A stretch of 64,000 bases of DNA from Phaeosaccion multiseriatum (GCA_965112735.1 OZ218951.1:5828001-5892000), one strand, 5' to 3'. Positions 16,901 to 64,000 are shown, counted from the stretch's first letter. The notes: generated from the sequence alone by a model not told the origin. Program-made: numbers and translations.

Positions 16901-17997
16901 GCGGTGTGTGAGGTGCGAGGCCTTCTGCGGAGGAGGAGGAGGAGGAGGAGGGGTGCTGCCACTGCTGGCAGTGCTGCCGGGGCCCTGACCCATGCCATGC
17001 TCAACTCCGGCACTGAGCTCGGTGAGGAGCGCGAGCAGGTGGGGCGCCGCGAGGATGGCAGCAGACAGTGGCGCGTCCGAAAGCACAACAGGGCACTCCT
17101 CCGCCGCCACGCGAAGCCGCCGCAGCCCCAGAGCGACCCCCGGGGGGCACTTGCACTTGTATATGGCGGAGCAGAGACCGTGCACTTGGGCGAAGAAGGC
17201 AGGGAACAGGCGCTCTGCAGGCTCCTCCACGCCCCCCTGGCCCTGAGCCTGGCCCTGACCCCCGGGTAGGTGGTCCTCCGCTGTGCTTCCCAGCAGCAGC
17301 TCCACCGCCGTGACGTTCCCTCCCAGCAGCCCCTCCACGGCTCTCTTCACAACCGCCGGCACTTCTCTGTCTCTCACGCCACCTGCGGGGCACCACAGCT
17401 CTTCGCCACCCATACGACTGCCCCCGCCGCTGCTGCCCATATGCCTCCTACTTGTCCTTACTCCTCGTGCCCCTGCTCTTGCCAGGAGCGGCGCCCCTCG
17501 ATAAAGCTCGGCCATGGCGCAGCCCACCTGGAACAGGTCTGTCGCTCGTCCCAGAGAGCCGCTGCTGGTGGAGGCACTGGAGCTCATACTCTTTCTCTCC
17601 TTCTCGTCTCCCTCGTCCTCCTCCTTCTCCACATGAGAACGGCCACCACCCAGATCATCATCGCCTGAAGCTCCACCGCAGCCGTCGTCGTTGGACAGCA
17701 GGGGCGTATACCTCGGCTCAAGCAAAGGAGCTGTTAGCGCCGCAAACTGCTCCACCACCTGCCCCCCTCCATCCACTGCCATCTCACCTCTATCCGCTAC
17801 CACGCCCCTGCCCGCCCCTCCCACGTAGTCCTCCAGCACCCCCCCCACCGCTCCCCCCGAGGCCTCTCGCCGGGGGTGAGGCCTCCGGAACAGCGTGACA
17901 TACCCCGGGCCGCGCGCTCGAGCAGGCAAGGCGAGGAGTCCCTTTGTGGAGTACAGCTTGTCGCCTCCTCCCCCCCCCCCTCCTCCTCCTCCTCCTC

Positions 17998-18032
<35 letters not shown>

Positions 18033-19736
18033 CACCGCAGGGGGACGTTCTTGTGCTGCACGGCGTCTCTCCCCTCGAGGCAGCAGCCAAACAAGAGGTC
18101 AATCCAGCGGTGCAGCTGGGCCGACACCTCTTCGCTCTCCAGCAGCCGCCGATGGTAGGCGATGAAGGCCTCCGCATCCGGGCACCAGGTGGGCAGCTCC
18201 AAGTCGGGCAGGGTTTCCGGGTTGTGTATGGAGCGCAGCACATCTGGCTGTAGGTAGAACTCCGGAATGCACTCCTCAGGCGTCCAGGCGTAGAGACGCG
18301 CCATACTCACAGGATAGTGCTCCGCCACCACCGAGGCCCTTACAACTTGCCGTAGTTGCCCCAGGGGGGTGCGCCTTGCGAGGTAGATGCAGAGCGTCAG
18401 CTCGGAAAGGCTTTCGGGAACGTGGTGGGGGGGCGTGCTGTCCCCCAGGGAGGAGGAGGAGGAGGAGGAGGAGGAGAGGTTTCGCAGCAGCGCTTGGTAC
18501 GTGAGGTCGAGCTGCGCGTCTCCCTTGGCGAGGCGGTACTTGGTCTTGCTCAAGTCCGTCCAGTGCCCAGTGCCCTCCTGGGAGGACAGATCGCTCACCC
18601 AGGGCACCACGGGATGGTGGGCGCTATCTCCTCCGCCCCTGCCCGCAGCTCTGTTGATGGCGAGGAGGTAGGTGAGGTTATCGACCTGTCCGTGCACCCA
18701 CCTCCACGTTAGGGGCGCGTCTTCTCCAGGGGGCAGGCGGGGGGGAGGCAGTAGCAGCCCCGATTCGGGGGAGAGGGGCGGGCGCAGCTGCAGCCATAGC
18801 AGCGGCGACATGTGCACCTGTGCCAGCAGCAGTTGGTGATACGGCCATGGGGACGGAACAGCGGGAAGGGAGCGGGGGGCGAGGGGAGGGGAGAAAGAGA
18901 GGTGTTTACGATAGGAGCAAAGAAACAGACTGTCAGACGATGCATGTGTCTCGGTAGTCGGATGGATGGAGGTGTAGGGGGGGGACGAGAGGCAAAAAAA
19001 ACGCTCGAAGGTTCCACAGGTTCGTTCGTTCTGTTGGGGTGTACGTACTCACGTGTCGAGGATCGAAGGTGGCGACGCCCTCCACTCCGGCTGCGTGAAG
19101 ATCTGCGGCTGCCTGCACGAGCTGGTAGCAAAGCCACCGGAGCACCAAGTCCGTGCCGTCCGCATCCAGGGTCCGCCCGGGCAAAGCCAGCAGGTGCTGC
19201 ACCCCACCGCCTACCAAGCCGATGCCGTGGGTGAGGGCGCTGAGGCGGAGGGGCTGGGGTGAGAAGAGGACGGCTCTGCAACCAGGACGCTTGCTGCTGC
19301 CCATGGGACGGTATATGTCCAGCACGTGTGCCTGGGAGGAGAGCAGAACCTCAAGTTGGCAGAGGGATCCGTCTGAGAGCTTGACGGAGGAAGCAGCGTG
19401 TGAGGTGGCTCTAGCAGCTGGTGCTTCATAGACCCAACGGACCAAGTCGTCTGCTTCCTTCTCCTGCACCACCTGAGCTGTACAGTCGAGGATGTTGCCG
19501 AGGTCTCGAGCCTGGCCCGAGAGCATCGGCTCCTCATGCTGCTCCTGCTGCTCCTGCTGCCGCTTCCCAGGGAGGAGCACATCGACCACCACTCGACTTC
19601 CCCAGAAGCAGGACTTTGTGGAAACTATCTCATCCACGGCGCAAAGCATTGAGGCACATGCCTCTTTCTTTTGGAGGCGTTCCGGCGTTGGTAGAGTTTC
19701 GTGCTCGTGTTGGCTCTCCAATCGTCGCCATTTCAC
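12280..19736 (-). CDS. WDR81/GFS12-type BEACH-domain and WD40 protein (about 4 exons)
   Basis: BEACH signature WVHGQVDNLTYLLAINRAAGR..HPVVPWVSD..DLSKTKYRLAKGDAQLDLTY..HHVPE.LSEL..LARRTP..YPVSMARLYAWTPEECIPEFY..LHRWIDLLFG. The C-terminus is WD40-like (WWAHSGQV, LLGCADGFVRV). Confidence 0.88.
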
Positions 19737-46186: not shown

Positions 46187-49100
46187 GTGGGGCACCTGCC
46201 CCACGAAATAATTGTTTTGGATATTTTATGGGCCATAAATGCTCGTTTTTCAAGTTTTTTATCCAATATTTTTTGGTTGTGGGGCATTCTCCCCCCCCTC
46301 CCCACGTGGAGTTTATTTCATTCACAGCATCAGCATATTTGCACAGTGCAGCTATGTAAGAGGAGCAGCGGCTGCGCGGACGATACCCGGCTGTAACAGC
46401 TGATGCCAGTGGTGGGAGGGGCATCTCCCACGTGAATTTGCAGGAGAACAGAGTATACCATGGCTGACGTCGCTGTTGCTACGGTTCCGGAAGCACCAGC
46501 AGCAGAGGGGGAAGAAGCACCGCTTACTGCAGAGCAGCAGCAGATTCAGAACCCCCGAAACAACACCATCGCCCCACGCTCGAGAAGTGGATATGCATGC
46601 GCCTCCACGATGCTGATCCGATACCTCTTCCGCAAGCACCCGGAGCTTCTGGACCCTGACTTCAGGACAGCATTTGCTCCACCGGAGGGGGAAGAGGAGG
46701 AAGACGGGGAAGATGGGGAAGAGGAGGAAGCACAGAGGAGAGCAGCAGCAGCCGCAGCAGCCGCCGCACCTGGCGGAGCGGGTGGTGCCACTGCAGCGGC
46801 ACAGCAGACGCCGGCTGAGGTGTCGAGAGCAGCGAAAGCCCAAGCAAAGGCCAAGAAGAAGGCTGAGGCGCAGTGGACGAAGCGGGTGAAGGCACACTTG
46901 ATCCAAGCACCTCGGGCGCCGCACCCTTTGCTGTTCCATCTGCTGACAGCCGACGCGTTCTTCGGGTGGCTGCTTGAAGTCAAGAAGGGGCCGAAGGGCT
47001 TATCCAAGGCCGGTGCACAGTCGAAACGCTCTGCACTCTTCAATCTGTACAGAGACTACCATCAGGAGGAGCAGCACCGCAAATTGCAAAGCGACCTTGC
47101 GACGCTCACCAAGGGGCTGAAGAGGACGATCGCAGGAGAGAAGCAGGAGGGAAATGTCGAAGTCAGAGAAGGGAAGGCTCCCATGCCGTTCGCTCTCTAC
47201 CGCGCTCTTGCCAAAGGTAAATTCCCAGCTGTGTGGAGTCAGTGGACAGTGGAAACTAGTGGAGTGGGTGGAGACAAGTGGCTGATGCATTGACTGCCCC
47301 CCACTCACTTCCTAGCCCTGACGCCGTCTTTGGTTGCCACTGTTTCCTTCGCTTGTGTACATCGCAGCAATGCTGAGCTCGGCAGTCTGTGAGAACGGGC
47401 ACAGACAGGGCGCCTTTGGCCACCCCTTCCTCGTTCTCTCCTGGAATCTGATGTGCCGCGCCACCAACTGTGTGGAGATTTGTCTCGATCATCTCGAGTG
47501 GAAGGGGGACGCGCTCTGCGTCTATTTTGGGAAGCAAAAGGGCGACCAGCTGGGAGAGAAGGCCCGACATCCTCGCCACGTCTACGCGAATCCAATCATG
47601 CCGGAGATCTGCCCCGTCCTCGCGCTTGGTGTTTACCTCCTGAGCTTTGGTTTTGAGAAGAACGCGCTGTTCGCTGGCAACAATCAGTACGATAGGTATT
47701 GCGGCTTCCTCAGACGTACGGCGGCGGCGAACTCGTCCATTTTGGAAGGCATGGGGCTGACTCCAGAGGACCTCGGCACTCATTCTGGGCGCAAGGGCGC
47801 TGCCTCGCACGTCACAAGCGGCTCGTCCGCTGCTCCCAACCCAATTGCTGTGCAACTTCGAATGGGATGGTCTCTTCCCGGCGTCCAGGGCATCTACTTC
47901 AACCCCATCAATGCAGCAGATCAGTATGTGGGCCGGGCTGCCTCCGGGGCGAACATCTCAGCGAAGGAGTTTGCATTGCTTCCTCCCTTTTTTCAGCGCC
48001 TCAAGGTGGACGGCACAGCGAAGGAGGGCATTGAAGACGTGCTCGCGGGAGCCATTGTGAGCTGCTTCAGGGACGTGCCGCTGAGATTGAGGAAGGTGGC
48101 TGAATTCTGTCTTGCCAGTGTGGTGTACCACGCCGGCTTTCTGCGCAGCACTCTTCAGGAGAATCACCCTCTTTTCACGACACAGCTCTTCCGAGATCAA
48201 AGGTTGCTGGCGGACCTTTCAGAGCATGTCGTGCTGAAGTATCCGGACGAGACGGACGAGATTTCTGCAACCGGGATTCCTCCCCACGTCGTGCAGCTGA
48301 GGCAATTCCAAGTCGTGGCGGACAGCGTGGCCTCTCTAGGCGGCAAGCTTGAGGTGTTGGGCCAGACGATCAAGGTCGACTTGGAGACGCTGATCCGTGA
48401 CGTTCTGGAGGAGAATGCACAGGCCTCTGGCACTGTCACCAGTCTGGGTGTGAGCAGGGCCCTGCAGACGACCCTCGACGCAGCCTTTTCTAAGAGTGGG
48501 CTCAGCGACCTTCTCGCGGCTCACCAGGCAGGCACTCTGGGCCTTGGTGAGGGTTCGAGCAGCGCCCCGCCCTCTTCTTCTTCTTGTGCAGGTGCAGATC
48601 AGCCACCTCTGTATCTCTACAACGGCCGGTGGCATACCCTTCCCGAGCACTTTGAGGTCCCTAGCTTCACTGTGCGCGCTGCTTGGGATGCTTGGATGAC
48701 AGGCACTCCTCGCCTTCGAGAATTCACGACAGCAGACGTGCAGGGGAGGGCGGAGAAGCGAAGGATGTCAAAATTTTGCTGTTTGATGGGTGCGATTGAA
48801 TCCGCGGCGAAAGAAAAGGGGCTCTGGAAGGACAAGCCGACGCTTGAAGAAGCGCGAAGCATGTTTGACGCAGTCAAAGACGCCTTTGACATCAAGTCTC
48901 GTTCTGATTCTCACAAGCGCCGCTTCAATCAGCTGGTGTGGACCACCGTGTATATTTTATGGAGCGCGCAGCAGGCGGACGCGAAAAAACGGGCGAAGCG
49001 GGCGAGGGCGAAGGAAAGTGGCACTGGTGCAGACGAGTCGAAGGAGGGGGATGGAGGTGATAGCGGTGCAGAGGACGACGAGGAGGGAGGTGGCAGCAGC

Positions 49101-49742
49101 AATGCTGCTGCTGCTGCTGCTGCTGCAACAGGAGGAGGCGGAGCCGGAGGAGGACGAGGAGGAAGGGGTGGGGGAAGGGGGGCCCAAAAAAAACAGCGTA
49201 CTGGTACTGGTACTGCTTCTGATGCTGCTTCTGCTGCTGCCTCTGATGCGGCCGCTGCGGCCGCTACTGCCGCTGCTGCCGCGTCAGCAGCGCCGTCGTT
49301 GGGCGGCTTGAGAGAGGGAGACATGGCCTTCACATGCTCGTATGGCTGTACTAAGCCCTCGCAAGTCAAGCTGTTCCTCTGCCCATCCGAAAGAGCGTGT
49401 GGAAACCTCGTGCACCACATGTGCACCGTCGAGTTTTGCGACAGCAAGGGTTTTGTGGAAGGCGATTTTGACTACTACTGTAAGCCATGCATGATTGAGG
49501 ACGGACACTAAGTGTGTCTGTAAATATGAATACCATTGTTATCGTGGTAATACCATTATATCGTCATATCATAGCGTAGTATATTTTCCCCTGTAGCAGG
49601 GGCAGACACACACACAAAAAAAGGAGGGGGGGGGGAAGGGGCGCTACTGGTCCATATTGGGTACTGTACTAAAAATACCCACTTTTAAAAAAATTGGGTA
49701 CTAAAAATACCCACTTTCACCGAGTGGGGCATCTCGCCCCAC
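46187..49742 (+). mobile_element. Crypton-type tyrosine-recombinase DNA transposon (ends approximate)
   Basis: Single YR gene with AT-rich flanks, bracketed by related palindromes GTGGGGCACCTGCCCCAC (46187-46204) and GTGGGGCATCTCGCCCCAC (49724-49742). Confidence 0.7.
46460..49511 (+). CDS. Tyrosine recombinase with GCR1_C-like domain and C-terminal Cys/His finger (about 966 aa; intron 47217-47367)
   Basis: Candidate catalytic residues lie in WNLMCRATN (R), GTHSGRKG (HxxR), RMGWS (W) and QGIYF (Y). RHVYANP..PEICPVLAL and LPEHFEVPSFTVRAAWDAW resemble Crypton proteins. The spliced length of 2901 nt is open. Confidence 0.88.
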
Positions 49743-53647: not shown

Positions 53648-54870
53648 GTACGGGGTGGATGGCTGCCGCGAACATTAGGGGCCCTTCCGGTGCTCCTTGG
53701 TTGACTCCCGAGCTCTGGTAGATGGTGCGGGTGCCTTCTGGGGGTGAGGGCGTTCTGGGCTGCCGCGTGGGTCATGTTGGCTATGGCGTAGTTGATGCCT
53801 CCCGGGTCGATGGTGGAAAATGCTCCTGGTGCGAGGACGCCTCTGGCACGCGATACCTTGGTGTATGCCTTGGAGATGTCCTGCAGCACGACGGTTCTGC
53901 CGGCGTCGTGTGCCAGCTGGGCTGCTGCTGCGTGGATTTCACCTCCTCCCCTGACTGCGACCACCAGCTGCCCCGCGGCTCTGAGCTGTGGTGGCAGTGG
54001 GGTGCTCCCCGTGTGCATGAGCTCGTAGGTGTCGGTCAATGCCTCCACGCGGCTCAAGCGTCGCGCCGGACCAGTGCTCCCCCTCCTCGGCCGAGAGGGA
54101 GAGAAAAGGGCCCCTGGTTCACCTGGTGGGCCCCCAGAGACACACGCACACGGTCGTACATACATACACACCCACACACACCCTTTACAGTTCTTTTATG
54201 CCTCCTAGAAGTCAGTGAAGCCCCCCCACTGTGGGGTAGGCCACTCGTTCATGCCATATCGGAAACCCGAGGCAGACGTTAATTAATTCACTCTCGTTCT
54301 ATCCATAAAGCTTTGGCGTCTATCTCTCCCGCCAGGTGGTGGGGAGTACACAGACAAAGAGTGTGAGTCACAGTTAGCGAAGGTTCACTGACGCTACAGA
54401 TCACTCACTGGTGGAGTACAAAAAGAAACCTGGTTTATGCAGCGTCCGAACTACTAAACCGTATCAAGTCTGATCGGACAAACTCTTGATACTCGCCGAG
54501 CTTACGACACTCTTTACGAAGATCCAACTATACTTTGCAACCGTACACCCTCCTGATCGAGCACCCAAAACTCTGCCTGAGTGATTCGTAGCTCCTGGCC
54601 ATAGAATCCCCTCGTAACACCACTTGCTTGTTTATTAATCTAGGCGCTAGCTACTCACGCAACAGCGGGCCGCATGTATTGCCCGGCGACGCCTGGCTCC
54701 TCTCCCCCTTGCTTCGCTAAACGGATTCGAGCACCCACCAGCCACACTATCGCTGCCAGTCCGCACGAGAACTGCCAACGTCTAGAAAGTACAGCACTTT
54801 GAATCGAGAAGAACACCCCTGCCTTTCCCCTTTGATTGGCAGCACCTGCCACTCTGCTTCACCTGTCCTC

Positions 54871-55058
54871 GCGAGCACTCACCTACTACTACTACATTTT
54901 GAATGAAAAACAACCCCCCCCCTCAATTGGCAGCACCCACTACCCATGACCACCCCTCAATTGGCACCACCCACTACTCAGTGTTCGCGAGCACTCCCGA
55001 CCTACTACTACTACATTTTGAATGGAAAACACCCCCCCCCCCTCAATTGGTAGCACCC
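54871..55058. repeat. Degenerate tandem duplication (about 116-bp period)
   Basis: gcgagcactc..cctactactactacattttgaatg.aaaac..ccccctcaattgg.agcaccc occurs twice. Confidence 0.8.
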
Positions 55059-55175
55059 ATCCCTCTGCTTCACCAGTCCTCGCCGAGCACTCCCAACTCT
55101 ACAGCAAAACGAATCGAGAAAACACACCCGCCCTCTCCCCTCCCACCCCACCTTTCCACTCCAAGGCTTCTCTAC

Positions 55176-58100
55176 TCAAGAGCGGCGCGCGGGGAAGGCA
55201 GTCCCCCAAGGCCCATCCACGATGTAATCCTCGTCGTGCACAGACTTCAGGATGGCGTCGCGCCCCTTGAGGGCCTGGCCAGTAGCGGGGTCGAACTTGA
55301 GGGTCTGCGTCTCGCCAAGCACCCCGCTCCACTCCTCCACGCCTTCGTCGTTGGGGGACAGCATCATCACGGCGTCGACGACGTGGGCGTGGCAGCGCTC
55401 CACCTCCTGACGATAATCGATCTGGAACGCGTAGGTGGCCGTCGTGATGTAAACGGACGCCCAGCTGCCGGGCGAGTCGAAGAGGTCACGGTAAATACGC
55501 TTTTCCGCGATCCAGGCCGAGCACGCTTCGCGGTCCTCCATCCTGTGGAGACGAGCCTCCAGGACATCCAGAACACGGAGGTCGGCGGTGATGGCAAATT
55601 CTTCTTCGCTGAGCCGACGAGCACGAGGCTGGACTGTCGCACGCAGCTCCTCCTCCTCCTCCTTCAGCCGGTGCATCATGTGGACATCTCGCTTGGTCTG
55701 GCAGGTTCCAACGATATTGAAAGCCGTGACCGAGTCGCCGTTCTCGAACATGTACTCCCCAGGGGTGGTGATGGTCTCGCCGTTGATGCTCATCTCGAGG
55801 GAGCCCTCGCCGAGGCACACGCCGCCCTCTCCCGCGGGGCACCCGGGGTTGTAGTTGCCCACGTCCTTCACGCCGACTTCAATCTCATAATCGGCGAAGG
55901 TGAAGGCATGCTTCGTGACGTAAGTCTGTAGAGAGGCCGCGAGCAGAGCAGATGCAGCCGGCAGAGCGAGGCGGTGCACAACGTCGACAAGAGAAAGCAT
56001 CGTCAGTGAGATGAATCGGAACCGTCCCACGTGACAAGGAGAACATGGAAGAGACTTGACCTCCTCGCCGTCACTCACCGGCATGAGGCCATCCTCGCAC
56101 TCCTCGAAGACATGGAGGAGCCAGTTCCACTGCAGGTGGTCTTCGGCAAGGGCGGCGAACCACTTGGCGTTGAGGCCCTTGAACAGAAAGCTTTGGCCCT
56201 TGAGGCCCGTCACCACGGGATCGCTGTTGACGCCGACGGTAGCACATACGAGCACACCGCTCGACACGCTGAGGAAAGGCGGGAGAGCGACGTGGATCGA
56301 CCGGGGAAGGAAGAGATTGCAATTGGGAATGAGCTTCCATCTCAGCACGGAATGCCCGTGGATGGATAGGCGTGGCCCGGCGGGCGGCGTGTGTCACTCG
56401 ACAGAGAAAGGGGCGCCAAAAGGCTCAACTGTGGCCTGGCTGCGGAGGGTGTTAATACACGTACACTTACCACCCATCACCGGAGCAGCAGGCGGCCTCA
56501 AGCCCATCAGCAGCTTGGGCAAACTGTGCACCCTGTTGTGCACGCGAGAGGAGGGGCCAGTGCCATAGGGAAAGGAGGACGGGGCATTGCGTGCGTCAGC
56601 AGTCGACAGCCGGGGAAGACACACACCACCGAAAGGGGGGGGGCGGGGATCTGCCTGCGGCAGTGCAGCCCATGTAAAGTGTGTCAGCGCTCCGCTACTA
56701 GCTGCTACCACCTACCACACAGGAGTTGGGTCCAGTGCACAGTGCCGCGGTTCCAGGGCCAAAATCCGCGTCCTGCAAGAGGTGGGACGTGAAGGGAGGA
56801 GGATATGGGGTCTCAGTCAGAGAAGTAGAGCAACCTTAGATAGTGAAAGCAGAACCAGGCCATTGCGGGGTGAGCAGTAGCAGCTGCGAAAGGCATACAG
56901 GTGTGGGATCATCATGGTTGCCAGTGGGAAGCAGTGCACCAGGCCCGCCCCTGCTGATAGAGCGGGCGGGGAGAGCCAAACGGGGTGGCTGCAACGCGTG
57001 GATGCATCATTGTCTCAGCGCTCAAGCCTGTGTGCTGCCACCACGTACCTCACATGAGCCGTCTCCAGTGCACTCTATGGTGGTCGGGGAGTCACCAGTG
57101 ACACCTTGAAGTTTCTGTAAGGCAGAGGCAGGTGGTGGGACGGGAATAAAGGGAGGGATTGTGGTGTTTAGAGAAGCAGCCAGAGCATTCTATGAGAGTA
57201 AAAGCAAGCAGCACCGACGCGATCGAAAGTAGCGCAGAAGAAGTCAGAGTGAGGTGTGTAGCTAGCCAGTCTATCATGGCCTGCCTCTCAAGGCGAGCCG
57301 CCACACAAGAGCGCGGCCGGCCAGCGGTAGCGATACTCGAGTGCAAGGAGATGCCTGGTAGAAGAAATATACTTGCGTCCATCTTCCTTACGGCGCAGGC
57401 GGAAACACCTTCGCACTTACCCTCGTGCCTTCGGGTACTATTGCGGCTGAATCTCTCGAAACTGTGATGCCCTGTTCAAGAGCAGAGAGAGAACAGAGCA
57501 AGCAAAAGACGATGGAGCAAGGAAAGAGAAGGGAGAGCATCATATGCTTGCGAAAGCGGTAGTACATACGATCTGAAGCGAAGCCAAGACGTTGGCAGGG
57601 AGATGCGTTGGCTGGCCAGCCCGTCTATCATGTTGTGCCTCTCAATGACACGAGACCGGCCATGCAATTTGCAAGTCCAGCCATGCAACTTGCAAGGACA
57701 CGGTGGCAGACTGACTCAAGTGCTTAGCTATAGGAAAAGTACACATGCTGTCCATAATCATTCTGCATTTTGCTTACCAGGCAGGATCGCAATCCAATGC
57801 AGACTATCAGTGACCCAGATTCAATCACAGCCTTCTGTTCGAATGCACGCAGGCAGGGGAAGTGTGCACCAGTGGGGCAACAAGAGGTGGCCAGTGGTGG
57901 GACGCGAAGAAAAGGAGGATGCTGGGCGTGAGTCTCCGAGAAAAGAAAGTAGAAAGAAAGAGAATGCAGTAGCTAGCTACCATGTGATTTATCACTAATC
58001 AAGTAGTAAAGCGTAAGGAGAGGTCAGAGGTGAGCGTGTGTTGGGCCAGTATATCATGATCTGCCTCTCAATACGAGCCGCCATGGCACTGCCAGCCAGA

Positions 58101-61100
58101 GCCCGGCGGCAGGCTGACTCAAGGGGAAGCAGATGCCTAGTAGAAGAAGTACACTGGAAGAAGTACTTACCTGGCAGGTTAATTCACCTGCGCATATCCC
58201 ACTTGAGCCGCTGAAAACAGCAAACTGTTCGAATGCACGCAGGCAGGAGTGCACCAGTAGAGCATCAAGAGGTGGCCAGTCGGACGTGAAGAAAAGGAGG
58301 ATACTGGGCGTGAGTCTCCGAGAAAAAGCAGCAGAAAACGTCAGGGACGAAAGCCGTATCACATAATCTACTAAGGTAGACGAAGAGAGGTCAGAACCAG
58401 GCCATTGCGGGGTGAGCAGTAGCAGCTGCGAAAGGTATACAGGTGTGGGATCATCATGGTTGCCAGTGGGAAGCAGTCCACCAGGCCCGCCCCTGCTGAT
58501 AGAGCGGGCGGGGAGAGCCAAACGGGGTGGCTGCAGCGCGTGGATGCATCATTGTCTCAGCGCTCAAGCCCATGTGCTGCCACCACGTACCGCACATGAG
58601 CTGTCTCCAGTGCACGCTGCGGTGGTCCGGGAGACACCAGTGACATCTTGAAGTTTCTGCAAGGCAGAGGCATGTGGTGGGATGGGGGAGGGATTGTGGG
58701 GTTTAGAGAAGCAGCCAGAGCATTCTATGAGAGTAAAAGCAAGCAGCACCGACGCGATCGAAAGTAGCGCAGAAGAGGTCAGAGTGAGGTGTGTAGCTAG
58801 CCAGTTTATCATGGCCTGCCTCTCAAGGCGAGCCGCCACACACGCAAGAGCGTGGCCGGCCAGCGGTAGCGTTACTCGAGTGCAAGGAGATGCCTGGTGG
58901 AAGAAATATACTTGCGTCCATCTTCCTTACGGCGCAGGCGGAAACACCTTCGCACGTACCCTCGTTCCTTCGAGTACTATTGCTGAATCTCTCGAAACTT
59001 TGATGCCCTGTTCAAATGTGCCACAGGAGTGCAGAGAGAGAACAGAGCAAGCAAAAGACGACGGAGCAAGGAAAGAGAAGGGAGAGCATCATATGCTTGA
59101 GAAAGCGGTAGTACCATACGATCTGAAGCGAAGCCAAGACGTTAGGAGGGAGATGCGTTGGCTGGCCAGCCCGTCGATCATGTTGTGCCTCTCAATGACA
59201 TGAGACCCGCCATGCAATTTGCAAGCCCAGCCATGCAACTTGATTGCAAGGACCCAGTGGCAGACTGACTCAAGTGCATAGCTATAGAAAAAGTACCCAT
59301 GCTGTCCACAATCATTCTGTATCTTACAATGCAGGCAAGATGACCCTCGCAGACTATCAGTGACCCAGATTCAATCACAGCGTCCTGTTCGAATGCACGC
59401 AGGCAGGGGAAGTGTACACCAGTGGGGCGACAAGAGGAGGCCAGTGGTGGGACGTGAAGGAGGATGCTGGGCGTGAGTCTCCGAGAAAATAAAAGTAGAA
59501 AGAAAGAGAAAGTAGTAGGGACCATGTGATCTATCACTAATCAAGTAGTAAGGCGTAAGGAGAGGTCAGAGGTGAGTGTGTGTTGGGCCAGTACATCATG
59601 ATCTGCCTCTCAAAACGACCCGCCATGCAAGCAAGAGCCCGACGGCAGGCTCACTCAAGGGGAGGCAGATGCCTAGTAGAAGAAGTACATGATGTGATAA
59701 ATCGATGTCGACATTAGATATCGATGTCATATCGCTGGTACAAGTCCGTTCACTCCTCTAATAGCGGTATGTAGCTAATAAGACGCTTTCCCACAAACCC
59801 GAGCAAGTGCTCCACTGGTCTCTAGAAGAGAGATATCCCAACAGTACATTGGAAGAAGTACTTACCCCGCAGGAAGATTCACCGCATGTCCCCGTTGAGC
59901 CACTGAAAACAGCAAACTGTGTGCACACACGCAGGCAGGAGTGCACCAGTGGAGCATCAAGAGGTGGCCAGTCGGACGTGAAGAAAAGGAGGATACTGGG
60001 CGTGAGTCGTCGAGAAAAAGCAGCAGAAAACGTCGGTGACGAAAGCCGTATCACGTCATCTACTAAGAAGGTACTAGACGAAGAGGTCAGAGGTGAGTGT
60101 GTGTTAGGCCAGTCTATCATGATCTGCCTCTCGATACGAGCCGCCACGCCAGAGCCCGGCGGCAGGCTGACTCAAGGGGAAGCAGATGCCTAGCAGAAGA
60201 AGTACATTGGAAGAAGCACTTACGTCGCAGGAATTTTCACCTGTGCATGTCCCCGTTGAGCCGCCGCTGAAACCCGCCTCCTGTGTGCACACACGCAGGC
60301 AGGAGTGCACCAGCGGAGCATCAAGAGGCGGCCAGTCGGACGTGAAGAAAAGGAGGATGCTGGGCGTGAGCCTTCGAGAAAAAGCAGCAGAAAACGTCAG
60401 TGACGAAAGCCGTATCACGTCTTCTACTAAGAAGGTAGCTAGACGAAGAGGCCAGAGGTGACGTGTGTGTTGGGCCAGTATATCATGATCTGCCTCTCAA
60501 TACGACCCGCCATGCAAGCAAGAGCCCGACGGCAGGCTGACTCAAGGGGAAGCAGATGCCTAGTAGAAGTACATTGGAAGAAGTACTTACCTGGCAGGAA
60601 TTTTCACCTGTGCATGTCCCCGTTGAGCCGCCGCTGAAACCGGCCTCCTGTGTGCACACACGCAGGCAGGAGTGCACCAGTGGAGCATCAAGAGGCGGCC
60701 AGTCGGACGTGAAGAAAAGGAGGATGCTGGGCGTGAGCCTTCGAGAAAAAGCAGCAGAAAACGTCAGTGACGAAAGCCGTATCACGTCTTCTACTAAGAA
60801 GGTAGCTAGACGAAGAGGCCAGAGGTGACGTGTGTGTTGGGCCAGTATATCATGATCTGCCTCTCAATACGACCCGCCATGCAAGCAAGAGCCCGACGGC
60901 AGGCTGACTCAAGGGGAAGCAGATGCCTAGTAGAAGGACATTGGAAGAAGTACTTACCAGGCAGGAAAATTCACCAGTGCATGTCCCCGTTGAGCCACTG
61001 AAACCGGCCTCCTGTGTGCACACATGCAGGCAGGAGTGCACCAGTGGAGCATCAAGAGGCGGCCAGTCGGACGTGAAGAAAAGGAGGATGCTGGGCGTGA

Positions 61101-63826
61101 GTCTTCGAGAAAAAGCAGCAGAAAACGTCAGTGACGAAAGCGTATCACGTCATCTACTAAGAAGGTAGCTAGACGAAGAGGTCAGAGGTGACGTGTGTGT
61201 TGGGCCAGTATATCATGATCTGCCTCTCAATACGACCCGCCATGCAAGCAAGAGCCCGACGGCAGGCTGACTCAAGGGGAAGAGGATGCCTAGCAGAAGA
61301 AGTACATTGGAAAAGTACTTACGTCGCAGGTTAATTCACCTGCGCATATCCCACTTGAGCCGCCGCTGAAACCGGCCTCCTGTGTGCACACACGCAGGCA
61401 GGAGTGCGCCAGTGGAGCATCAAGAGGCGGCCGGTCGGACGTGAAGAAAAGGAGGATGCTGGAGCGTGCGTCTTCGAGAAAGCGCAGCAGAAAACGTCAG
61501 TGACGAAAGCCGTCTCACTTCATCTAGCTACTAAGAAGGTAGACGAAGAGAGGTCAGAGGTGAGGTGTGTGTTGGGCCAATATATCATGATCTGCCTCTC
61601 AATACGACCCGCCATGCAAGCAAGAGCCCGACGGCAGGCTGACTCAAGGGGAAGCAGATGCCTAGTAGAAGGACATTGGAAGAAGTACTTACCTTGCAGG
61701 ACAATACACCTGTGCATGTCCCCGTTGAGCCGCCGCTGAAAATGGCCCCCTGTGTGCACACACGCAGGCAGGTGTGCACCAGTGGAGCATCAAGAGGCGG
61801 CCAGTCGGGCGTGAAGAAAAGGAGGATGCTGGGCGTGAGTCTTCGAGAAAAAGCAGCAGAAAACGTCGGTGACGAAGCCGTATCACGTCATCTAGCTACT
61901 AAGAAGGTAGACGAAGAGAGCTCAGAGGTGAGCGTGTGTTGGGCCAGACTATCATGATTTGCCTCTCAATACGAGCCACCATGCAAGAACCCGGCGGCAG
62001 GCTGACGAGAGGCAGATCCTTGCGTAGATGGTAGAAGAAGTATATCACGTGAAGTATATGGTGCTCATCTTCCTCTATCTTACCGAGCAGGTACGGTCGT
62101 TACCATCGCAGTCCACCTGTGAGCCTTCGAACTTGGATGGGTTTCCCGGTTCAGACTGTGGCAGGGTTAGCACGCAGGCAGGCAGGAGTGCACCAGCGGA
62201 GCAACAAGAGGTGGTCAGCGGGACGTGAAGAAAGGGAGGATGCAGGGCGTGAGTCTCCAAGCACTACTACAAAGTCAGTGAAAGCCGTTCCACCCATCCA
62301 CGAAGGCCGAAGAGAGGTCAGAGATGGGGAGTCTTAGAAGAAGTACATGCATCTCCGTCTTCCTTACCTGGCAGGACCCTACACCAATGCAACCAACCAC
62401 TGAATCGAGAGACATGATGCCCTGTTCAAATGCAAGCAGCAGGAGTGCAAGTGGAGCAAGAGGTGGCCAGAGGGACGTGAAGAAAGTGACGATGCAGGGC
62501 GTGAGTCTCCAAGCACTATAAAGTAAGTGAAAGCCGTTCCACCCATCCACGAAGGCCGAAGAGACGTCAGAGGTGGGGTAGTCTTAGTAGAAGAAGTACA
62601 TGCATGTCCGCCTTCCTTACCAGGCAGGATTGTGGACCAGTGCAAGCGCTGACACCGGCTGTCTGTGTGTTGGAGACACTGGCTCTCTGTGCGCACGCAG
62701 GCAGGCAGGAGTGCACCAGTGGAGCAACAAGAGGTGACCAGAGGGACGTGAAGAAGGGGAGGATGCAGGGCGTGAGTCTCCAAGCACTACTACAAAGTCA
62801 GTCAAAGCCGTTCCACCCACCCACAAAGGCCGAAGAGAGGTCAGAGGTGGGGTAGTCTTAGTAGAAGAAGTACATGCAGCCATGTCCGTCTTCCTTACCT
62901 CGCAGGAACCTGGACCAACGCAAAGCAGATCTGAATCGTCAGACGTGATGTCCTGTTCAAATGCACGCAGCAGGAGTACAAGTGGAGCAAGAGGTGGCCA
63001 GAGGGACGAAAAGAAAGGGAGGATGCAGGGCGTGAGTCTCCAAGCACTATAAACACCCGTCGGTGAAAGCCGTTCCACCCATCCACGAAGGCCGAAGAGA
63101 GGTCAGAGGTGGGGTAGTCTTAGTAGAAGAAGTATATGCATGTCCGTCTTCCTTACCTCGCAGGAATCTGGACCACGGCAAACCACATCTGAAGCGGTAG
63201 ACGTGATGTCCTGTTCAAATGCAAGCAGCAGGAGTACAAGTGGAGCAAGAGGTGGCCAGACGCGAAGAAAAGGAGGATGTTGGGCCTGAGTCTCCGAGAG
63301 AAAGCAGCACACTATGTGAGTAAAAGCCGTACGACGCGAACTACTACTATCATGATCTGCCTCTCAAGGCGATCCGCCATGATTCACTCCCCCCCCCTCT
63401 TTTCCTTCCGTACCGAGCAGGAATCTGATGCGGAGCATTCCGCCCTTGATTGCGAGGTCAACTCAACACCCTGTGTGCAAGCAGGCAGGCAGTTGTGCAC
63501 CAGAGGAGCAACAAGAGGAGGCCAGAGGGACGTGAAGAAAAGGAGCATGCAGGGCGTGAGTCTCCGAGAAAACGAACTTTAAACACGAAGTGAAAGCCGA
63601 ACCAGAGATTGGTGTACTGTGGGGAAGAGTGTACTGTGGGGAAGAGTGGTCAGAGGTGAGGTGTGTGTTACGGTGTCTCCGGGGTGTCGCTCCCCTGACG
63701 GGGGCGAACGGCAGCTTGACTCAAGGGGAAGCAGATGCTTATAACTAGGCTGTTGTCCGCCTTTCTTACCGGGCAGGCGTCCGCAGCAGCGCAGAGCGCA
63801 GTTGCATCCGAGTCAAACGTGGAGTC
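55176..63826 (-). CDS. Cys-repeat cassette-exon protein with VWD-like C-terminal domain (5' end outside the window)
   Basis: 21 cassette exons are followed by cap exon 56471-56532 (phase 0-2), exon 56079-56268 (CVSSG..NSDPVVTGLKGQSFLFKG..WFA) and terminal exon 55176-55925 (..GVLGET). Phases join in frame, using internal donors for the two frameshifted cassettes. Confidence 0.82.
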
Positions 63827-63900
63827 CTGTTCAAAGGCACGCAGTAGGAGCGAAAGCAAGTGGAGCAACAAGTTTTTGGATGTGAACAAAAGGAGCAGGA
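56716..63900 (-). repeat. Tandem array of exon+intron units (period mostly about 255-390 bp) with a 1.54-kb higher-order duplication
   Basis: Recurrent intron blocks include gcaggagtgcaccagtggagcatcaagagg, gggcgtgagtctccgagaaaa and tatcatgatctgcctctcaa. About 56851-58150 matches about 58393-59690. Confidence 0.95.
59691..59842. mobile_element. 152-bp insertion with 7-bp target-site duplication (AGTACAT)
   Basis: Sibling introns read gaagtacattggaag. Here agtacat occurs at both 59684-59690 and 59843-59849 around unrelated sequence. Confidence 0.8.
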
Positions 63901-64000
63901 GACTCAGGGCGAGAAGCCAAGCAGTAGACTACTGGCAGCCGGTATGAGCGAGAGCGAAAGCACTACCGGGCGATCTAAAGCAGATGTGCCGCTCAGTACG

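What the first reader, a model, noticed from the sequence alone, without database searches (positions are those of the whole stretch)
56851..59690. Exons diverge faster than introns, almost only non-synonymously, in a 1.54-kb four-exon duplication
Manual alignment: exons 57049-57114 and 58591-58656 differ at 8 of 66 nt in 7 codons, all non-synonymous, with both Cys kept. The adjacent intron segments (56851-57048 and 58393-58590) differ at only about 5 of 198 nt. Exons 57778-57834 and 59328-59384 are identical over codons 2-12, but nearly every codon around CxGxxxC is replaced (IGLRSCL vs EGHLACI). This inverts the usual exon/intron pattern and implies diversifying selection or targeted mutation/conversion on exposed residues, as in immune or self/non-self receptors.
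Basis: partly seen in the sequence, partly recalled or inferred. Interest (0 to 1): 0.88.

Follow-up and report, generated by a model that had tools for sequence, protein, structure and literature searches.

The report
Hypervariable repeat exons inside conserved introns
A gene of a stramenopile alga is built from about twenty tiny exons, each encoding one cysteine-loop repeat; in its recently duplicated blocks the introns stay about 95% identical while the loop-coding parts of the exons differ three to six times more, mostly by amino-acid changes, as expected for a surface protein selected to vary.

Summary
The region belongs to a minus-strand gene with at least 22 short phase-0 exons (48-72 nt). 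Nearly every exon encodes one repeat with the motif C-x-G-x-x-S-C.

**Duplication A/B.** Unit A (56850-58392) and unit B (58392-60085) differ at 34/222 exon sites and 66/1272 intron sites (p=6e-7).

**Same inversion elsewhere in the gene.**
- The 367-bp array.
- A two-exon duplication at 62165-63300: exon 28% against intron 6.5%.
- 122 of 135 pairs of repeats.

**Selection tests.**
- dN/dS is 1.6-2.6 for A/B and 1.9-3.1 pooled over eight exon pairs (p about 0.02).
- Silent change at conserved codons is 8%, close to the intron rate.
- Variable residues lie around the invariant Cys-Gly-Cys scaffold. The Cys-less exon b changes only at the intron rate.

**Source of the differences.** They are not all point mutations. 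The exon d differences are patches shared with other repeats, which points to short-tract conversion.

**Protein family.** The peptide is weakly related to diatom DUF7640 secreted proteins and models as a beta-solenoid.

**Best reading.** Diversifying selection acts on exposed residues, fed by point changes and patch exchange. "Almost only non-synonymous" and "immune receptor" are overstated or untested. The closest precedent is the Ectocarpus LRR/TPR exon-shuffling genes.

The parts
56850..58392 (-). Unit A of the 1.54-kb four-exon duplication (exons d, c, b, a in transcription order)
   Evidence: Self-BLAST and MAFFT alignment with unit B.
58392..60085 (-). Unit B of the duplication. It carries a B-specific 153-bp insertion at 59690-59842.
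58171..58224 (-). Exon Ad, FAVFSGSSGICAGELTCQ. Positions 58174-58211 are identical to the array exon at 61326-61363.
   Evidence: CAG acceptor, GTAAGT donor, 54 nt. Shared patch.
57778..57834 (-). Exon Ac, KAVIESGSLIVCIGLRSCL. The hypervariable patch is 57778-57798.
57421..57471 (-). Exon Ab, GITVSRDSAAIVPEGTR. This is the Cys-less rung and diverges like intron (internal control).
   Evidence: Homologues also have a Cys-less repeat at this position.
57049..57114 (-). Exon Aa, KLQGVTGDSPTTIECTGDGSCE. It differs from Ba at 8 scattered positions, all non-synonymous.
59866..59916 (-). Exon Bd, FAVFSGSTGTCGESSCG. It is also the first unit of the 367-bp array.
59328..59384 (-). Exon Bc, DAVIESGSLIVCEGHLACI. 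The hypervariable patch is 59328-59348.
58960..59007 (-). Exon Bb, GIKVSRDSAIVLEGTR.
58591..58656 (-). Exon Ba, KLQDVTGVSRTTAACTGDSSCA.
59846..62006 (-). 367-bp tandem array, one d-type exon per unit. Besides Bd (listed above), the exons are 60224-60280, 60591-60647, 60958-61011, 61323-61379 and 61693-61749. Exon diversity is 0.149 against 0.071 and 0.044 in the introns.
   Evidence: TRF. Unit alignment and diversity.
62165..63300 (-). Two-exon duplication X/Y. Exons are 63157-63210, 62899-62952, 62621-62686 and 62368-62421. Introns differ at 6.5% and exon 2 at 28%. The 5' half of exon 1 cannot be aligned.
62084..62155 (-). Further repeat exon, SEPGNPSKFEGSQVDCDGNDRTCS.
63414..63470 (-). Further repeat exon, GVELTSQSRAECSASDSCS.
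63770..63826 (-). Most upstream repeat exon in the window, DSTFDSDATALCAAADACP. The gene continues beyond position 64000.
56716..56772 (-). Repeat exon, DADFGPGTAALCTGPNSCV.
56471..56532 (-). Last, degenerate repeat exon (62 nt, GAQFAQAADGLEAACCSGDG). It changes the phase into the C-terminal part.
   Evidence: reading of the sequence.
56079..56268 (-). First exon of the C-terminal non-repeat part (..VSSGVLVCATVGVNSDPVVTGLKGQSFLFKG..).
   Evidence: Splice sites and frame read. No family match.
55176..55925 (-). Last exon (249 codons plus the stop codon at 55176-55178). Domain unidentified.

Best explanation
**What it is.** The finding is part of one minus-strand gene of an ochrophyte (stramenopile) alga. 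The gene encodes a long run of repeats of 16-24 residues (typically 18-19), one repeat per phase-0 exon. The consensus is x-a-x-F-S-G-S-x-x-x-C-x-G-x-x-S-C-x.

**Inferred protein.** It is probably a secreted or surface beta-solenoid. Each repeat would form one rung, fixed by a Cys-Cys bridge and a Gly.

**How the array grows (shown).** Every intron descends from one ancestral intron. Unequal crossing-over in these look-alike introns duplicates blocks of one, two or four exons. Blocks of all three sizes are present in the window.

**What happens after duplication (shown).**
- Introns, the 5' halves of the exons and silent sites drift at about 5-8%.
- Codons just before, between and just after the two cysteines are replaced several times faster, and mostly with a change of amino acid.

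**Where the variation comes from.**
- Ordinary point substitutions: exon a.
- Exchange of 10-40-nt patches among repeat exons, i.e. short-tract gene conversion: exon d (shown).
- At least one multi-nucleotide replacement of unknown origin: exon c.

**Why it persists (inferred).** Selection keeps or favours differences at residues that point outwards from one face of the solenoid. That fits a protein which binds, or must escape binding by, a changing partner: a virus, a parasite, a grazer or a mating partner. Which partner it is was not tested.
For: **Gene model.**
- 22 exons, all with a CAG acceptor. All donors are GTAAG or GTACG except one GTAGG. All lengths are multiples of 3 except the last repeat exon.
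- The spliced 95-aa peptide finds diatom and metagenome proteins with the same repeat, at E=1.8e-5 to 8.6e-4 in 1.84 billion sequences.
- One hit, from Proboscia alata, is a bona fide DUF7640 protein at 36.6 bits.
- Homologues share the Cys-less repeat at the position of exon b.

**Exon against intron.**
- A/B: 34/222 against 66/1272, p=6e-7.
- 367-bp array: segregating sites 18/57 against 41/316, p=0.001.
- X/Y: 15/54 against 26/397, p=1e-5.
- In 122 of 135 repeat pairs the exon differs more than the intron. Where introns differ by less than 5%, the loop-coding 30 nt already differ by 18%.

**Selection.**
- Pooled pN is 0.191 against pS 0.109; one-sided p=0.024.
- dN/dS is 1.9-3.1 depending on the method.
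- Only 6 codons differ synonymously alone, against 12.7-14.3 expected; P=0.005-0.025.
- Silent change at conserved codons is 6/73=0.08, about the intron rate.
- Exon b serves as a control: 3/48.

**Position pattern.**
- C1, G and C2 are never changed.
- Position +1 changes in 8/8 pairs, positions -2 and -7 in 5/8, position -9 in 4/8 and position -5 in 4/7.
- The AF2 model (pLDDT 72.6) places one 5-residue strand per repeat, ending just after C1. Positions -9, -7 and -5 therefore alternate on that strand.
- The weak Foldseek hits are mostly beta-solenoids.

**Patch exchange.**
- Ad shares 38 identical nt with the exon at 61326-61363, although the flanks differ. The run test gives p=0.004.
- 72 of 190 site pairs fail the four-gamete test.
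Against: - There is no transcript, read-level, population or outgroup evidence, so the direction and timing of the changes are unknown.
- dN/dS>1 is only borderline. It rests on about 105 synonymous sites and is inflated by multi-nucleotide patches, which are single events.
- The exon differences have a transition:transversion ratio of 23:48, against 55:42 in introns (p=0.003). That ratio looks like replaced or saturated sequence rather than accumulated point mutations.
- No donor for the exon c patch, or for the X/Y variants, exists in the window.
- The fold is a medium-confidence model from a shallow alignment, and no coordinates were available to measure exposure.
- The family link is weak: each typed piece scores 11.5-15.5 bits against a cut-off of 28.1.
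- The N-terminus lies outside the window, so a signal peptide is not shown for this protein.
Confidence: 0.6

Rival explanations
1. Old exons, young introns. The repeats are ancient and each rung has its own required residues. Ongoing gene conversion and unequal crossing-over homogenise the introns and the conserved exon halves. Conversions that would overwrite a loop are removed by purifying selection or blocked by heterology. Under this reading the exons did not diverge fast; the introns were repeatedly reset.
For: - The array is clearly mosaic: 72/190 site pairs are incompatible, and patches are shared between non-adjacent units.
- Acceptor-proximal intron patches (GAACAG against CACACAG types) also assort independently of their flanks.
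- The exon differences show a saturated-looking ts:tv ratio of 0.48 and many 2-3-nt codon changes.
- All introns descend from one ancestral intron and stay 75-95% alike.
Against: - Conversion tracts would have to stop at the first Cys codon in exon after exon.
- The a- and b-type introns have no copy in the window other than their A/B partner, yet they are as similar as the others.
- Exon a differs at eight scattered single sites with clean flanks, not as a block.
- There is no gradient of intron divergence towards the exons.
- This model still needs selection that preserves loop diversity, so it differs from the best explanation in timing rather than in kind.
Confidence: 0.22
2. Constrained introns. 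The introns carry functional elements needed to splice 50-nt exons, such as a hairpin, a pyrimidine block or enhancers, and so evolve slowly. The loop codons are simply unconstrained and evolve at the neutral rate.
For: - Conserved blocks recur in nearly all introns. One is an imperfect hairpin with 5 of 23 pairs showing compensatory change.
- Another is a block of about 110 nt upstream of each acceptor, found 14 times in the window against 0 expected.
Against: - Similarity extends over whole introns at about 95%, not only over the blocks.
- Silent sites at conserved codons (0.08) are close to the intron rate (0.05-0.065), so the introns are not markedly slow.
- Non-synonymous change exceeds synonymous change, which neutrality does not give.
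- Indels in the intron blocks are not multiples of three, and the region has no Rfam match.
Confidence: 0.08
3. A dedicated diversifying mechanism is at work: targeted hypermutation, templated mutagenesis or programmed (possibly somatic) cassette exchange aimed at the loop codons.
For: - Changes are sharply confined to about 20-30 nt per exon.
- Patch exchange is shown for exon d.
- Somatic cassette recombination has been proposed, not shown, for the analogous Ectocarpus genes (PMC3341825).
Against: - The changes show no base-specific spectrum: all six change classes occur.
- The window contains no reverse transcriptase, template repeat or inverted cassette. No repeat-like exons lie on the opposite strand.
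- One genome sequence cannot show somatic change.
Confidence: 0.05
4. Artefact. Either the 'exons' are not coding, or the differences are assembly or consensus errors in a tandem repeat.
For: - There is no transcript evidence.
- Tandem arrays of 258-367 bp are hard to assemble.
- The Pfam support is below the cut-off.
Against: - The differences keep the reading frame, both Cys codons, the Gly codon and every splice site in all 22 exons.
- Assembly errors would not avoid the introns.
- The spliced peptide finds proteins with the same repeat from other stramenopiles.
Confidence: 0.04

Closest known systems
Ectocarpus ROCO (LRR) and NB-ARC-TPR genes with one repeat per exon and exon shuffling (Zambounis et al. 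2012, PMC3341825; brown-algal ROCOs, PMC11378527)
   Same: - Stramenopile alga.
- Each repeat is encoded by its own phase-0 exon of constant size.
- Repeat number and order change by recombination in the repeat domain.
- Positive selection falls on exposed residues of a solenoid.
- Recently duplicated copies are near-identical except in the repeat exons.
   Different: - The repeat here is a Cys-rich unit of 16-24 residues (DUF7640-like), not an LRR or TPR.
- The window contains no ROC-COR or NB-ARC domain.
- The protein is probably extracellular, because it is rich in disulfide-forming Cys.
- No relic exons lie on the opposite strand.
- Here the contrast is quantified against intron divergence, and part of the variation is sub-exon patch exchange.
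Pfam DUF7640 (PF24646) proteins, e.g. Proboscia alata CAMPEP_0194391300 (P0026)
   Same: - Same C-x-G-x-x-S-C repeat of about 19-20 residues.
- Occasional Cys-less repeats.
- Found in stramenopiles.
- The homologues begin with hydrophobic, signal-peptide-like N-termini (read by eye).
   Different: - Only remote similarity: 31-42% identity, E=1e-5 to 1e-3.
- Pieces of the window protein score 11.5-15.5 bits, below the cut-off of 28.1.
- No function or gene structure is known for the family, and no paper mentions it.
Accelerated evolution of toxin and reproductive genes in which introns are more conserved than exons: crotaline snake venom PLA2 isozymes, conopeptides (own knowledge of the literature, not checked here)
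   Same: - Introns and untranslated parts are more conserved than the protein-coding parts of recent duplicates.
- There is an excess of non-synonymous change.
- The Cys framework stays invariant.
   Different: - Those are separate paralogous genes, not repeats within one gene.
- There is no one-repeat-per-exon array and no patch exchange among repeats.
Hypervariable solvent-exposed strand residues of LRR receptors: plant R genes, lamprey VLRs (own knowledge; summarised in PMC3341825)
   Same: - Variable residues alternate with conserved core residues on a stacked parallel strand of a solenoid.
- Diversity arises by duplication, conversion and point change.
   Different: - Different fold family and different organism.
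- Binding function and immune role are unknown here.

Membership tests
Pfam DUF7640 (PF24646) | Whole-protein score at or above the gathering cut-off of 28.1 bits | tested here: inconclusive
   - Three non-overlapping typed pieces each have DUF7640 as their only hit, at 11.5, 15.5 and 13.7 bits.
- The whole spliced protein has no reference and was not submitted.
- The simple sum of about 41 bits would pass, but that is not a valid score.
Pfam DUF7640 (PF24646) | Significant sequence similarity to an accepted member | tested here: met
   phmmer of the 95-aa spliced peptide against 1.84 billion proteins finds P0026 at E=1.8e-5. P0026 itself scores 36.6 bits on DUF7640.
Ectocarpus-type shuffled repeat-exon receptors (ROCO LRR / NB-ARC-TPR) | One repeat per phase-0 exon of near-constant length | tested here: met
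   In 21 of 22 exons the length is a multiple of 3 (48-72 nt) and each encodes one repeat.
Ectocarpus-type shuffled repeat-exon receptors (ROCO LRR / NB-ARC-TPR) | Repeats are LRR or TPR motifs | tested here: not met
   No LRR or TPR Pfam hit. The motif is C-x-G-x-x-S-C.
Ectocarpus-type shuffled repeat-exon receptors (ROCO LRR / NB-ARC-TPR) | Attached ROC-COR GTPase, kinase or NB-ARC signalling domain | tested here: not met
   The C-terminal 300 residues have no family hit. The N-terminal part lies outside the window, so absence from the whole protein is not shown.
Ectocarpus-type shuffled repeat-exon receptors (ROCO LRR / NB-ARC-TPR) | Evidence of recombination or shuffling among repeat exons, and positive selection at exposed residues | tested here: met
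   Shared patches and four-gamete failures. Pooled dN/dS is 1.9-3.1 with p about 0.02.
Ectocarpus-type shuffled repeat-exon receptors (ROCO LRR / NB-ARC-TPR) | Relic or inverted repeat exons inside introns | tested here: inconclusive
   None lies on the opposite strand. One out-of-frame fossil Cys loop sits in the intron after exon b, in both units.
Beta-solenoid (beta-helix) repeat proteins | One coil per repeat with stacked parallel strands | tested here: inconclusive
   - The AF2 model has pLDDT 72.6 and pTM 0.55, with one strand per repeat.
- Foldseek against the PDB gives no match with E<1. Most of the top weak hits are solenoids, such as pentapeptide-repeat proteins, the SV2 luminal domain and polygalacturonase.
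Diversity-generating retroelement or other templated mutagenesis | Reverse transcriptase plus a template repeat, with adenine-specific differences | tested here: not met
   All substitution classes occur. No second copy of the variable patches and no related sequence exist elsewhere in the window.

The most novel reading that the evidence does not exclude
DUF7640-like solenoid proteins may be a previously unrecognised class of hypervariable surface recognition molecules in ochrophyte algae. Their one-repeat exons would act as cassettes, reshuffled and patch-converted quickly enough (perhaps within populations or clonal lineages) to track viruses, parasites or mating partners. This would be a second, structurally unrelated counterpart of the exon-shuffled LRR/TPR candidate receptors of brown algae.
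Probability: 0.15. Interest if true: 0.8.

Novelty: new variant of a known kind. Interest (0 to 1): 0.6.

Why it matters
Very little is known about how microalgae recognise viruses, parasites or mates. Candidate receptors have been proposed mainly from brown algae.

This gene shows the classic signature of a molecule under pressure to vary: an invariant scaffold, hypervariable exposed positions, and exons that diverge faster than introns. It shows it in a protein family (DUF7640) with no known function.

The gene also carries its own neutral yardstick. The introns and the Cys-less exon b are duplicated together with the variable exons. That makes the selection test unusually clean, and it makes the gene a good starting point for population and host-virus studies.

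Finally, the gene shows in miniature how repeat proteins grow, by duplication of one-, two- and four-exon blocks, and how they diversify, by point change and sub-exon patch exchange.

Tried and rejected
- **Opposite-strand coding of the conserved intron block.** Rejected. Indels between copies are not multiples of three (reading), and no long plus-strand ORF lies in the region.
- **Intronic RNA genes.** No Rfam match at E up to 1 in 55000-64000. An intron hairpin has only weak covariation.
- **Related loci elsewhere.**
  - A metagenome scan with the 21-nt intron motif gave two chance hits with no flanking similarity.
  - Word-based protein searches with the C-terminal ORF and with P0026 found nothing new.
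- **Donor for the exon c patch.** None in the window with up to 4 mismatches.
- **Frame-shift explanation for the exon c patch.** An offset of 4 nt aligns 12/17, but the sequence CCTGCCTG is self-repetitive, so this carries little weight.
- **C-terminal domain.**
  - No Pfam hit except a weak, below-cut-off coiled-coil match (Trimer_CC, 14 bits against 27), and no PDB hit.
  - The single-sequence AF2 model was unusable at pLDDT 35.
  - My recollection that its SDPVV..F.F.G start resembles GDPH-type or root-cap domains was not borne out by Pfam.
- **Targeted mutagenesis.** No biased spectrum.
- **Not attempted.** The whole spliced protein (about 400 aa) was not submitted to any tool, because it has no reference and would have had to be typed.

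Full report
**What the window is.** The window has about 60% G+C, many microsatellites and many introns. A BEACH/WDR81-like ORF at 15362-18817 (minus strand) has as its best named relative a protein of Pelagophyceae sp. CCMP2097, at 57% identity. No closer match exists in 5.8 billion proteins. The source is therefore an ochrophyte (stramenopile) alga that is not itself in the database.

**Gene structure.**
- The finding lies in a minus-strand gene that enters the window at 64000 and ends at a stop codon at 55176-55178.
- Between 63826 and 56471 I find 22 short exons of 48-72 nt.
- All have a CAG acceptor. All donors are GTAAG or GTACG except one GTAGG.
- All but the last have a length divisible by three.
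- Nineteen of them each encode one repeat anchored on C-x-G-x-x-S-C, although a few copies deviate from it. The consensus is ......GS...C.G..SC..
- Two more, the b exons, encode a Cys-less repeat. The last exon (56471-56532) is a degenerate repeat.
- Two further exons, 56079-56268 and 55179-55925, encode about 310 residues with no recognisable domain. A single-sequence structure model of this part was useless at pLDDT 35.

**Support for coding.**
- The spliced 95-residue peptide from exons Ad-Ac-Ab-Aa plus the next exon was compared with 1.84 billion representative proteins. It finds four proteins built from the same repeat, at E=1.8e-5 to 8.6e-4, plus one unrelated repeat protein.
- The best hit is a transcriptome protein of the diatom Proboscia alata. 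It scores 36.6 bits on Pfam DUF7640, above the cut-off of 28.1.
- By eye, the homologues start with hydrophobic, signal-peptide-like N-termini, and one ends in a hydrophobic stretch.
- Two homologues also carry a Cys-less repeat where exon b sits.
- Three pieces of the window protein each have DUF7640 as their only Pfam hit, but at 11.5-15.5 bits.
- I therefore call the protein DUF7640-like. No paper mentions this family.

**The observation.**
- The duplication is confirmed. Positions 56850-58153 match 58392-59689 at 90.8% with gaps counted, and 58148-58375 match 59843-60067 at 89%.
- Unit B carries a private 153-bp insertion at 59690-59842.
  - 8/66 differences in exon a, in 7 codons, all non-synonymous.
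  - 5 differences in the adjoining 198-nt intron pieces.
  - Exon c identical up to the first Cys, then 12 of 21 nt different.
- Over the whole block the exons differ at 34/222 aligned sites and the introns at 66/1272. The odds ratio is 3.3 and p=6e-7.
- The nine most divergent 30-nt windows of the alignment all overlap exons c, d or a.
- Exon b, which has no Cys loop, differs at 3/48. That is the intron rate, so exon b serves as an internal control.

**The pattern is general in this gene.**
- Among five units of the 367-bp array (59846-62006), nucleotide diversity is 0.149 in the exon, against 0.071 and 0.044 in the flanking introns. Segregating sites are 18/57 against 41/316, p=0.001.
- A two-exon duplication, 62690-63300 against 62165-62700, has introns differing at 26/397 (6.5%). 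Its second exon pair differs at 15/54 (28%). Its first exon pair can be aligned only over the last 27 nt, where 7 differ; all seven are non-synonymous.
- All introns descend from one ancestral intron.
- Over 135 pairs of Cys-containing repeats, the loop-coding 30 nt differ more than the upstream intron in 122 pairs. Where introns differ by less than 5%, the loops already differ by 18%.

**Kind of change.**
- Nei-Gojobori counting for A/B gives dN 0.189, dS 0.122 and a ratio of 1.56, which is not significant alone at p=0.29.
- Pooling eight independent exon pairs gives pN 0.191 and pS 0.109, with one-sided p=0.024.
- Other estimators give ratios of 1.6-2.6 for A/B and 1.9-3.1 pooled, with dS about 0.08-0.12.
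- If the 71 observed differences are placed at random on the 139 codons, 12.7-14.3 codons should differ only synonymously. Six do (P=0.005-0.025).
- Silent change at codons whose amino acid is conserved is 6/73=0.08, close to the intron rate.
- The excess is therefore specifically amino-acid-changing. "Almost only non-synonymous" is true only of exon a.

**Where the changes fall.**
- Across eight recent pairs, C1, the Gly and C2 never change.
- The residue after C2 changes in 8/8 pairs.
- Positions -2 and -7 relative to C2 change in 5/8 pairs, position -9 in 4/8 and position -5 in 4/7. Positions -16 to -10 change in 1-2/8.
- An AlphaFold2 model of the 95-residue peptide was built from a 15-row alignment. 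It has pLDDT 72.6 and pTM 0.55, and it shows one 5-residue strand per repeat ending just after C1.
- Positions -9, -7 and -5 therefore alternate with the conserved -8, -6 and -4 on that strand. That is what one exposed face of stacked parallel strands would look like.
- Foldseek finds no significant PDB match. Most of the best weak hits are beta-solenoids. No solved structure is related by sequence.

**Source of the variation: at least two modes.**
- *Exon a.* Eight scattered single-site changes with clean flanks, which look like point substitutions.
- *Exon d.* This exon is a mosaic.
  - Unit A shares 38 identical nucleotides (58174-58211) with the array exon at 61326-61363, while its flanks differ.
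  - Unit B's version is shared with other array units.
  - A run test on polymorphic sites gives p=0.004 for that pair, and 72 of 190 informative site pairs fail the four-gamete test.
  - A short intron patch just before the acceptor (GAACAG type against CACACAG type) is also swapped.
  - The exon d differences are therefore imports by short-tract conversion, not new mutations.
- *Exon c and X/Y.* The exon c patch and the X/Y variants have no donor in the window.
- *Spectrum.* Exon differences show 23 transitions against 48 transversions, while introns show 55 against 42 (p=0.003). Of the 48 codons that differ, 21 differ at two or three bases. This fits replacement or repeated hits rather than a simple speed-up of the background process. 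No base-specific bias suggests a dedicated mutator.

**Interpretation.**
- The best-supported account is diversifying selection, or at least diversity-preserving selection. It acts on the outward-facing residues around the Cys loop of a probably extracellular solenoid.
- The array grows by unequal crossing-over in look-alike introns. It varies by point change and by patch exchange among repeats.
- The main rival is that the loops are old and the introns are repeatedly homogenised. That rival explains the mosaicism and the saturated-looking spectrum.
- The rival has three difficulties:
  - It needs conversion tracts to stop at the first Cys codon again and again.
  - It does not explain exon a.
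  - It still requires selection for loop diversity.
- Constrained introns, a targeted mutator and artefact are each unlikely, for the reasons given in the rival list.
- What the protein binds or evades is unknown. The immune or self/non-self reading is an analogy only.

**Comparison with what is known.**
  - Each LRR or TPR is encoded by one phase-0 exon.
  - The repeat domain is a recombination hot spot.
  - Exposed residues show positive selection (PMC3341825; see also PMC11378527).
- This gene shares that architecture and behaviour. It does not share the repeat type, and the window shows no signalling domain.
- From my own knowledge of the literature, introns being more conserved than exons is also the hallmark of snake venom PLA2 and conopeptide genes. 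Those are separate genes rather than repeats within one gene.
- I rate this a new variant of a known kind. It is a real and unusually clean case, in an uncharacterised family and a poorly studied lineage, but it is not a new principle.

**Limits.**
- One assembled sequence was available, with no reads, transcripts, outgroup or population data.
- There are few synonymous sites.
- Recombination confounds codon models.
- The family link is remote and the fold model is of medium confidence.
- The 5' end of the gene lies outside the window.

Noticed in passing
59690-59842: A 153-bp, relatively AT-rich insertion sits in the intron between exons Bd and Bc and is absent from unit A. It is flanked by GTACA on both sides. 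There is no other copy in the window and no obvious terminal inverted repeat.
   Followed up: partly
57392-57420 and 58931-58959 (minus strand): The first 29 intron bases directly after exon b would encode a complete Cys loop in another frame (G-K/T-C-E-G-V-S-A-C-A). This is followed by a second GTAAGG that aligns with the 5' ends of the 258-type introns. It looks like a fossil of an older, longer Cys-containing exon that was cut short by a newer upstream donor.
   Followed up: partly
introns of the array, e.g. 60648-60957 (minus strand): Nearly every long intron keeps an imperfect hairpin (GCCUGCCGY pairing with RUGGCGGGU, flanked by CUUGA/UUGAG), next to the conserved core UUGAGAGGCAGAUCAUGAUA. 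RNAalifold gives -13.8 kcal/mol, with 5 of 23 pairs showing compensatory change. There is no Rfam match and the function is unknown.
   Followed up: partly
57844-57944, 58225-58326 and 12 other sites up to 63562: A block of about 110 nt upstream of each acceptor is kept at 80-95% identity across all unit types. It contains GACTCACGCCCWGYATCCTCC, found 14 times in the window against 0 expected. This makes it more conserved than the exons it precedes.
   Followed up: yes
46460-47293 and 47334-49511 (+): Two adjoining intron-less ORFs of 277 and 725 aa lie in an otherwise intron-rich region. The longer one has a C-terminal Cys/His cluster. Neither has a Pfam, NCBIfam or PDB match. They may be a mobile element.
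   Followed up: partly
55176-56268 (minus strand): The C-terminal ~310 residues of the repeat gene start with ..NSDPVVTGLKGQSFLFKG.. and have no detectable family or homologue. The in-frame 153-nt stretch 55926-56078 may or may not be spliced out.
   Followed up: partly
57778-57798 vs 59328-59348: The exon c patch aligns better with a 4-nt offset (12/17) than in frame (9/21), which hints at a compensated frameshift. However, the sequence CCTGCCTG is self-repetitive, so this may be chance.
   Followed up: yes
54869-54939 vs 54985-55059: A short direct repeat (about 90% identity, ~115-bp spacing) lies just downstream of the stop codon of the repeat gene, in the probable 3' untranslated region.
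   Followed up: no
15362-18817 (minus strand): A BEACH/WDR81-like gene with long homopolymeric Gly, Ser and Glu runs. Its nearest named relative is from a pelagophyte at 57% identity, which gives the only clue to the source organism.
   Followed up: partly
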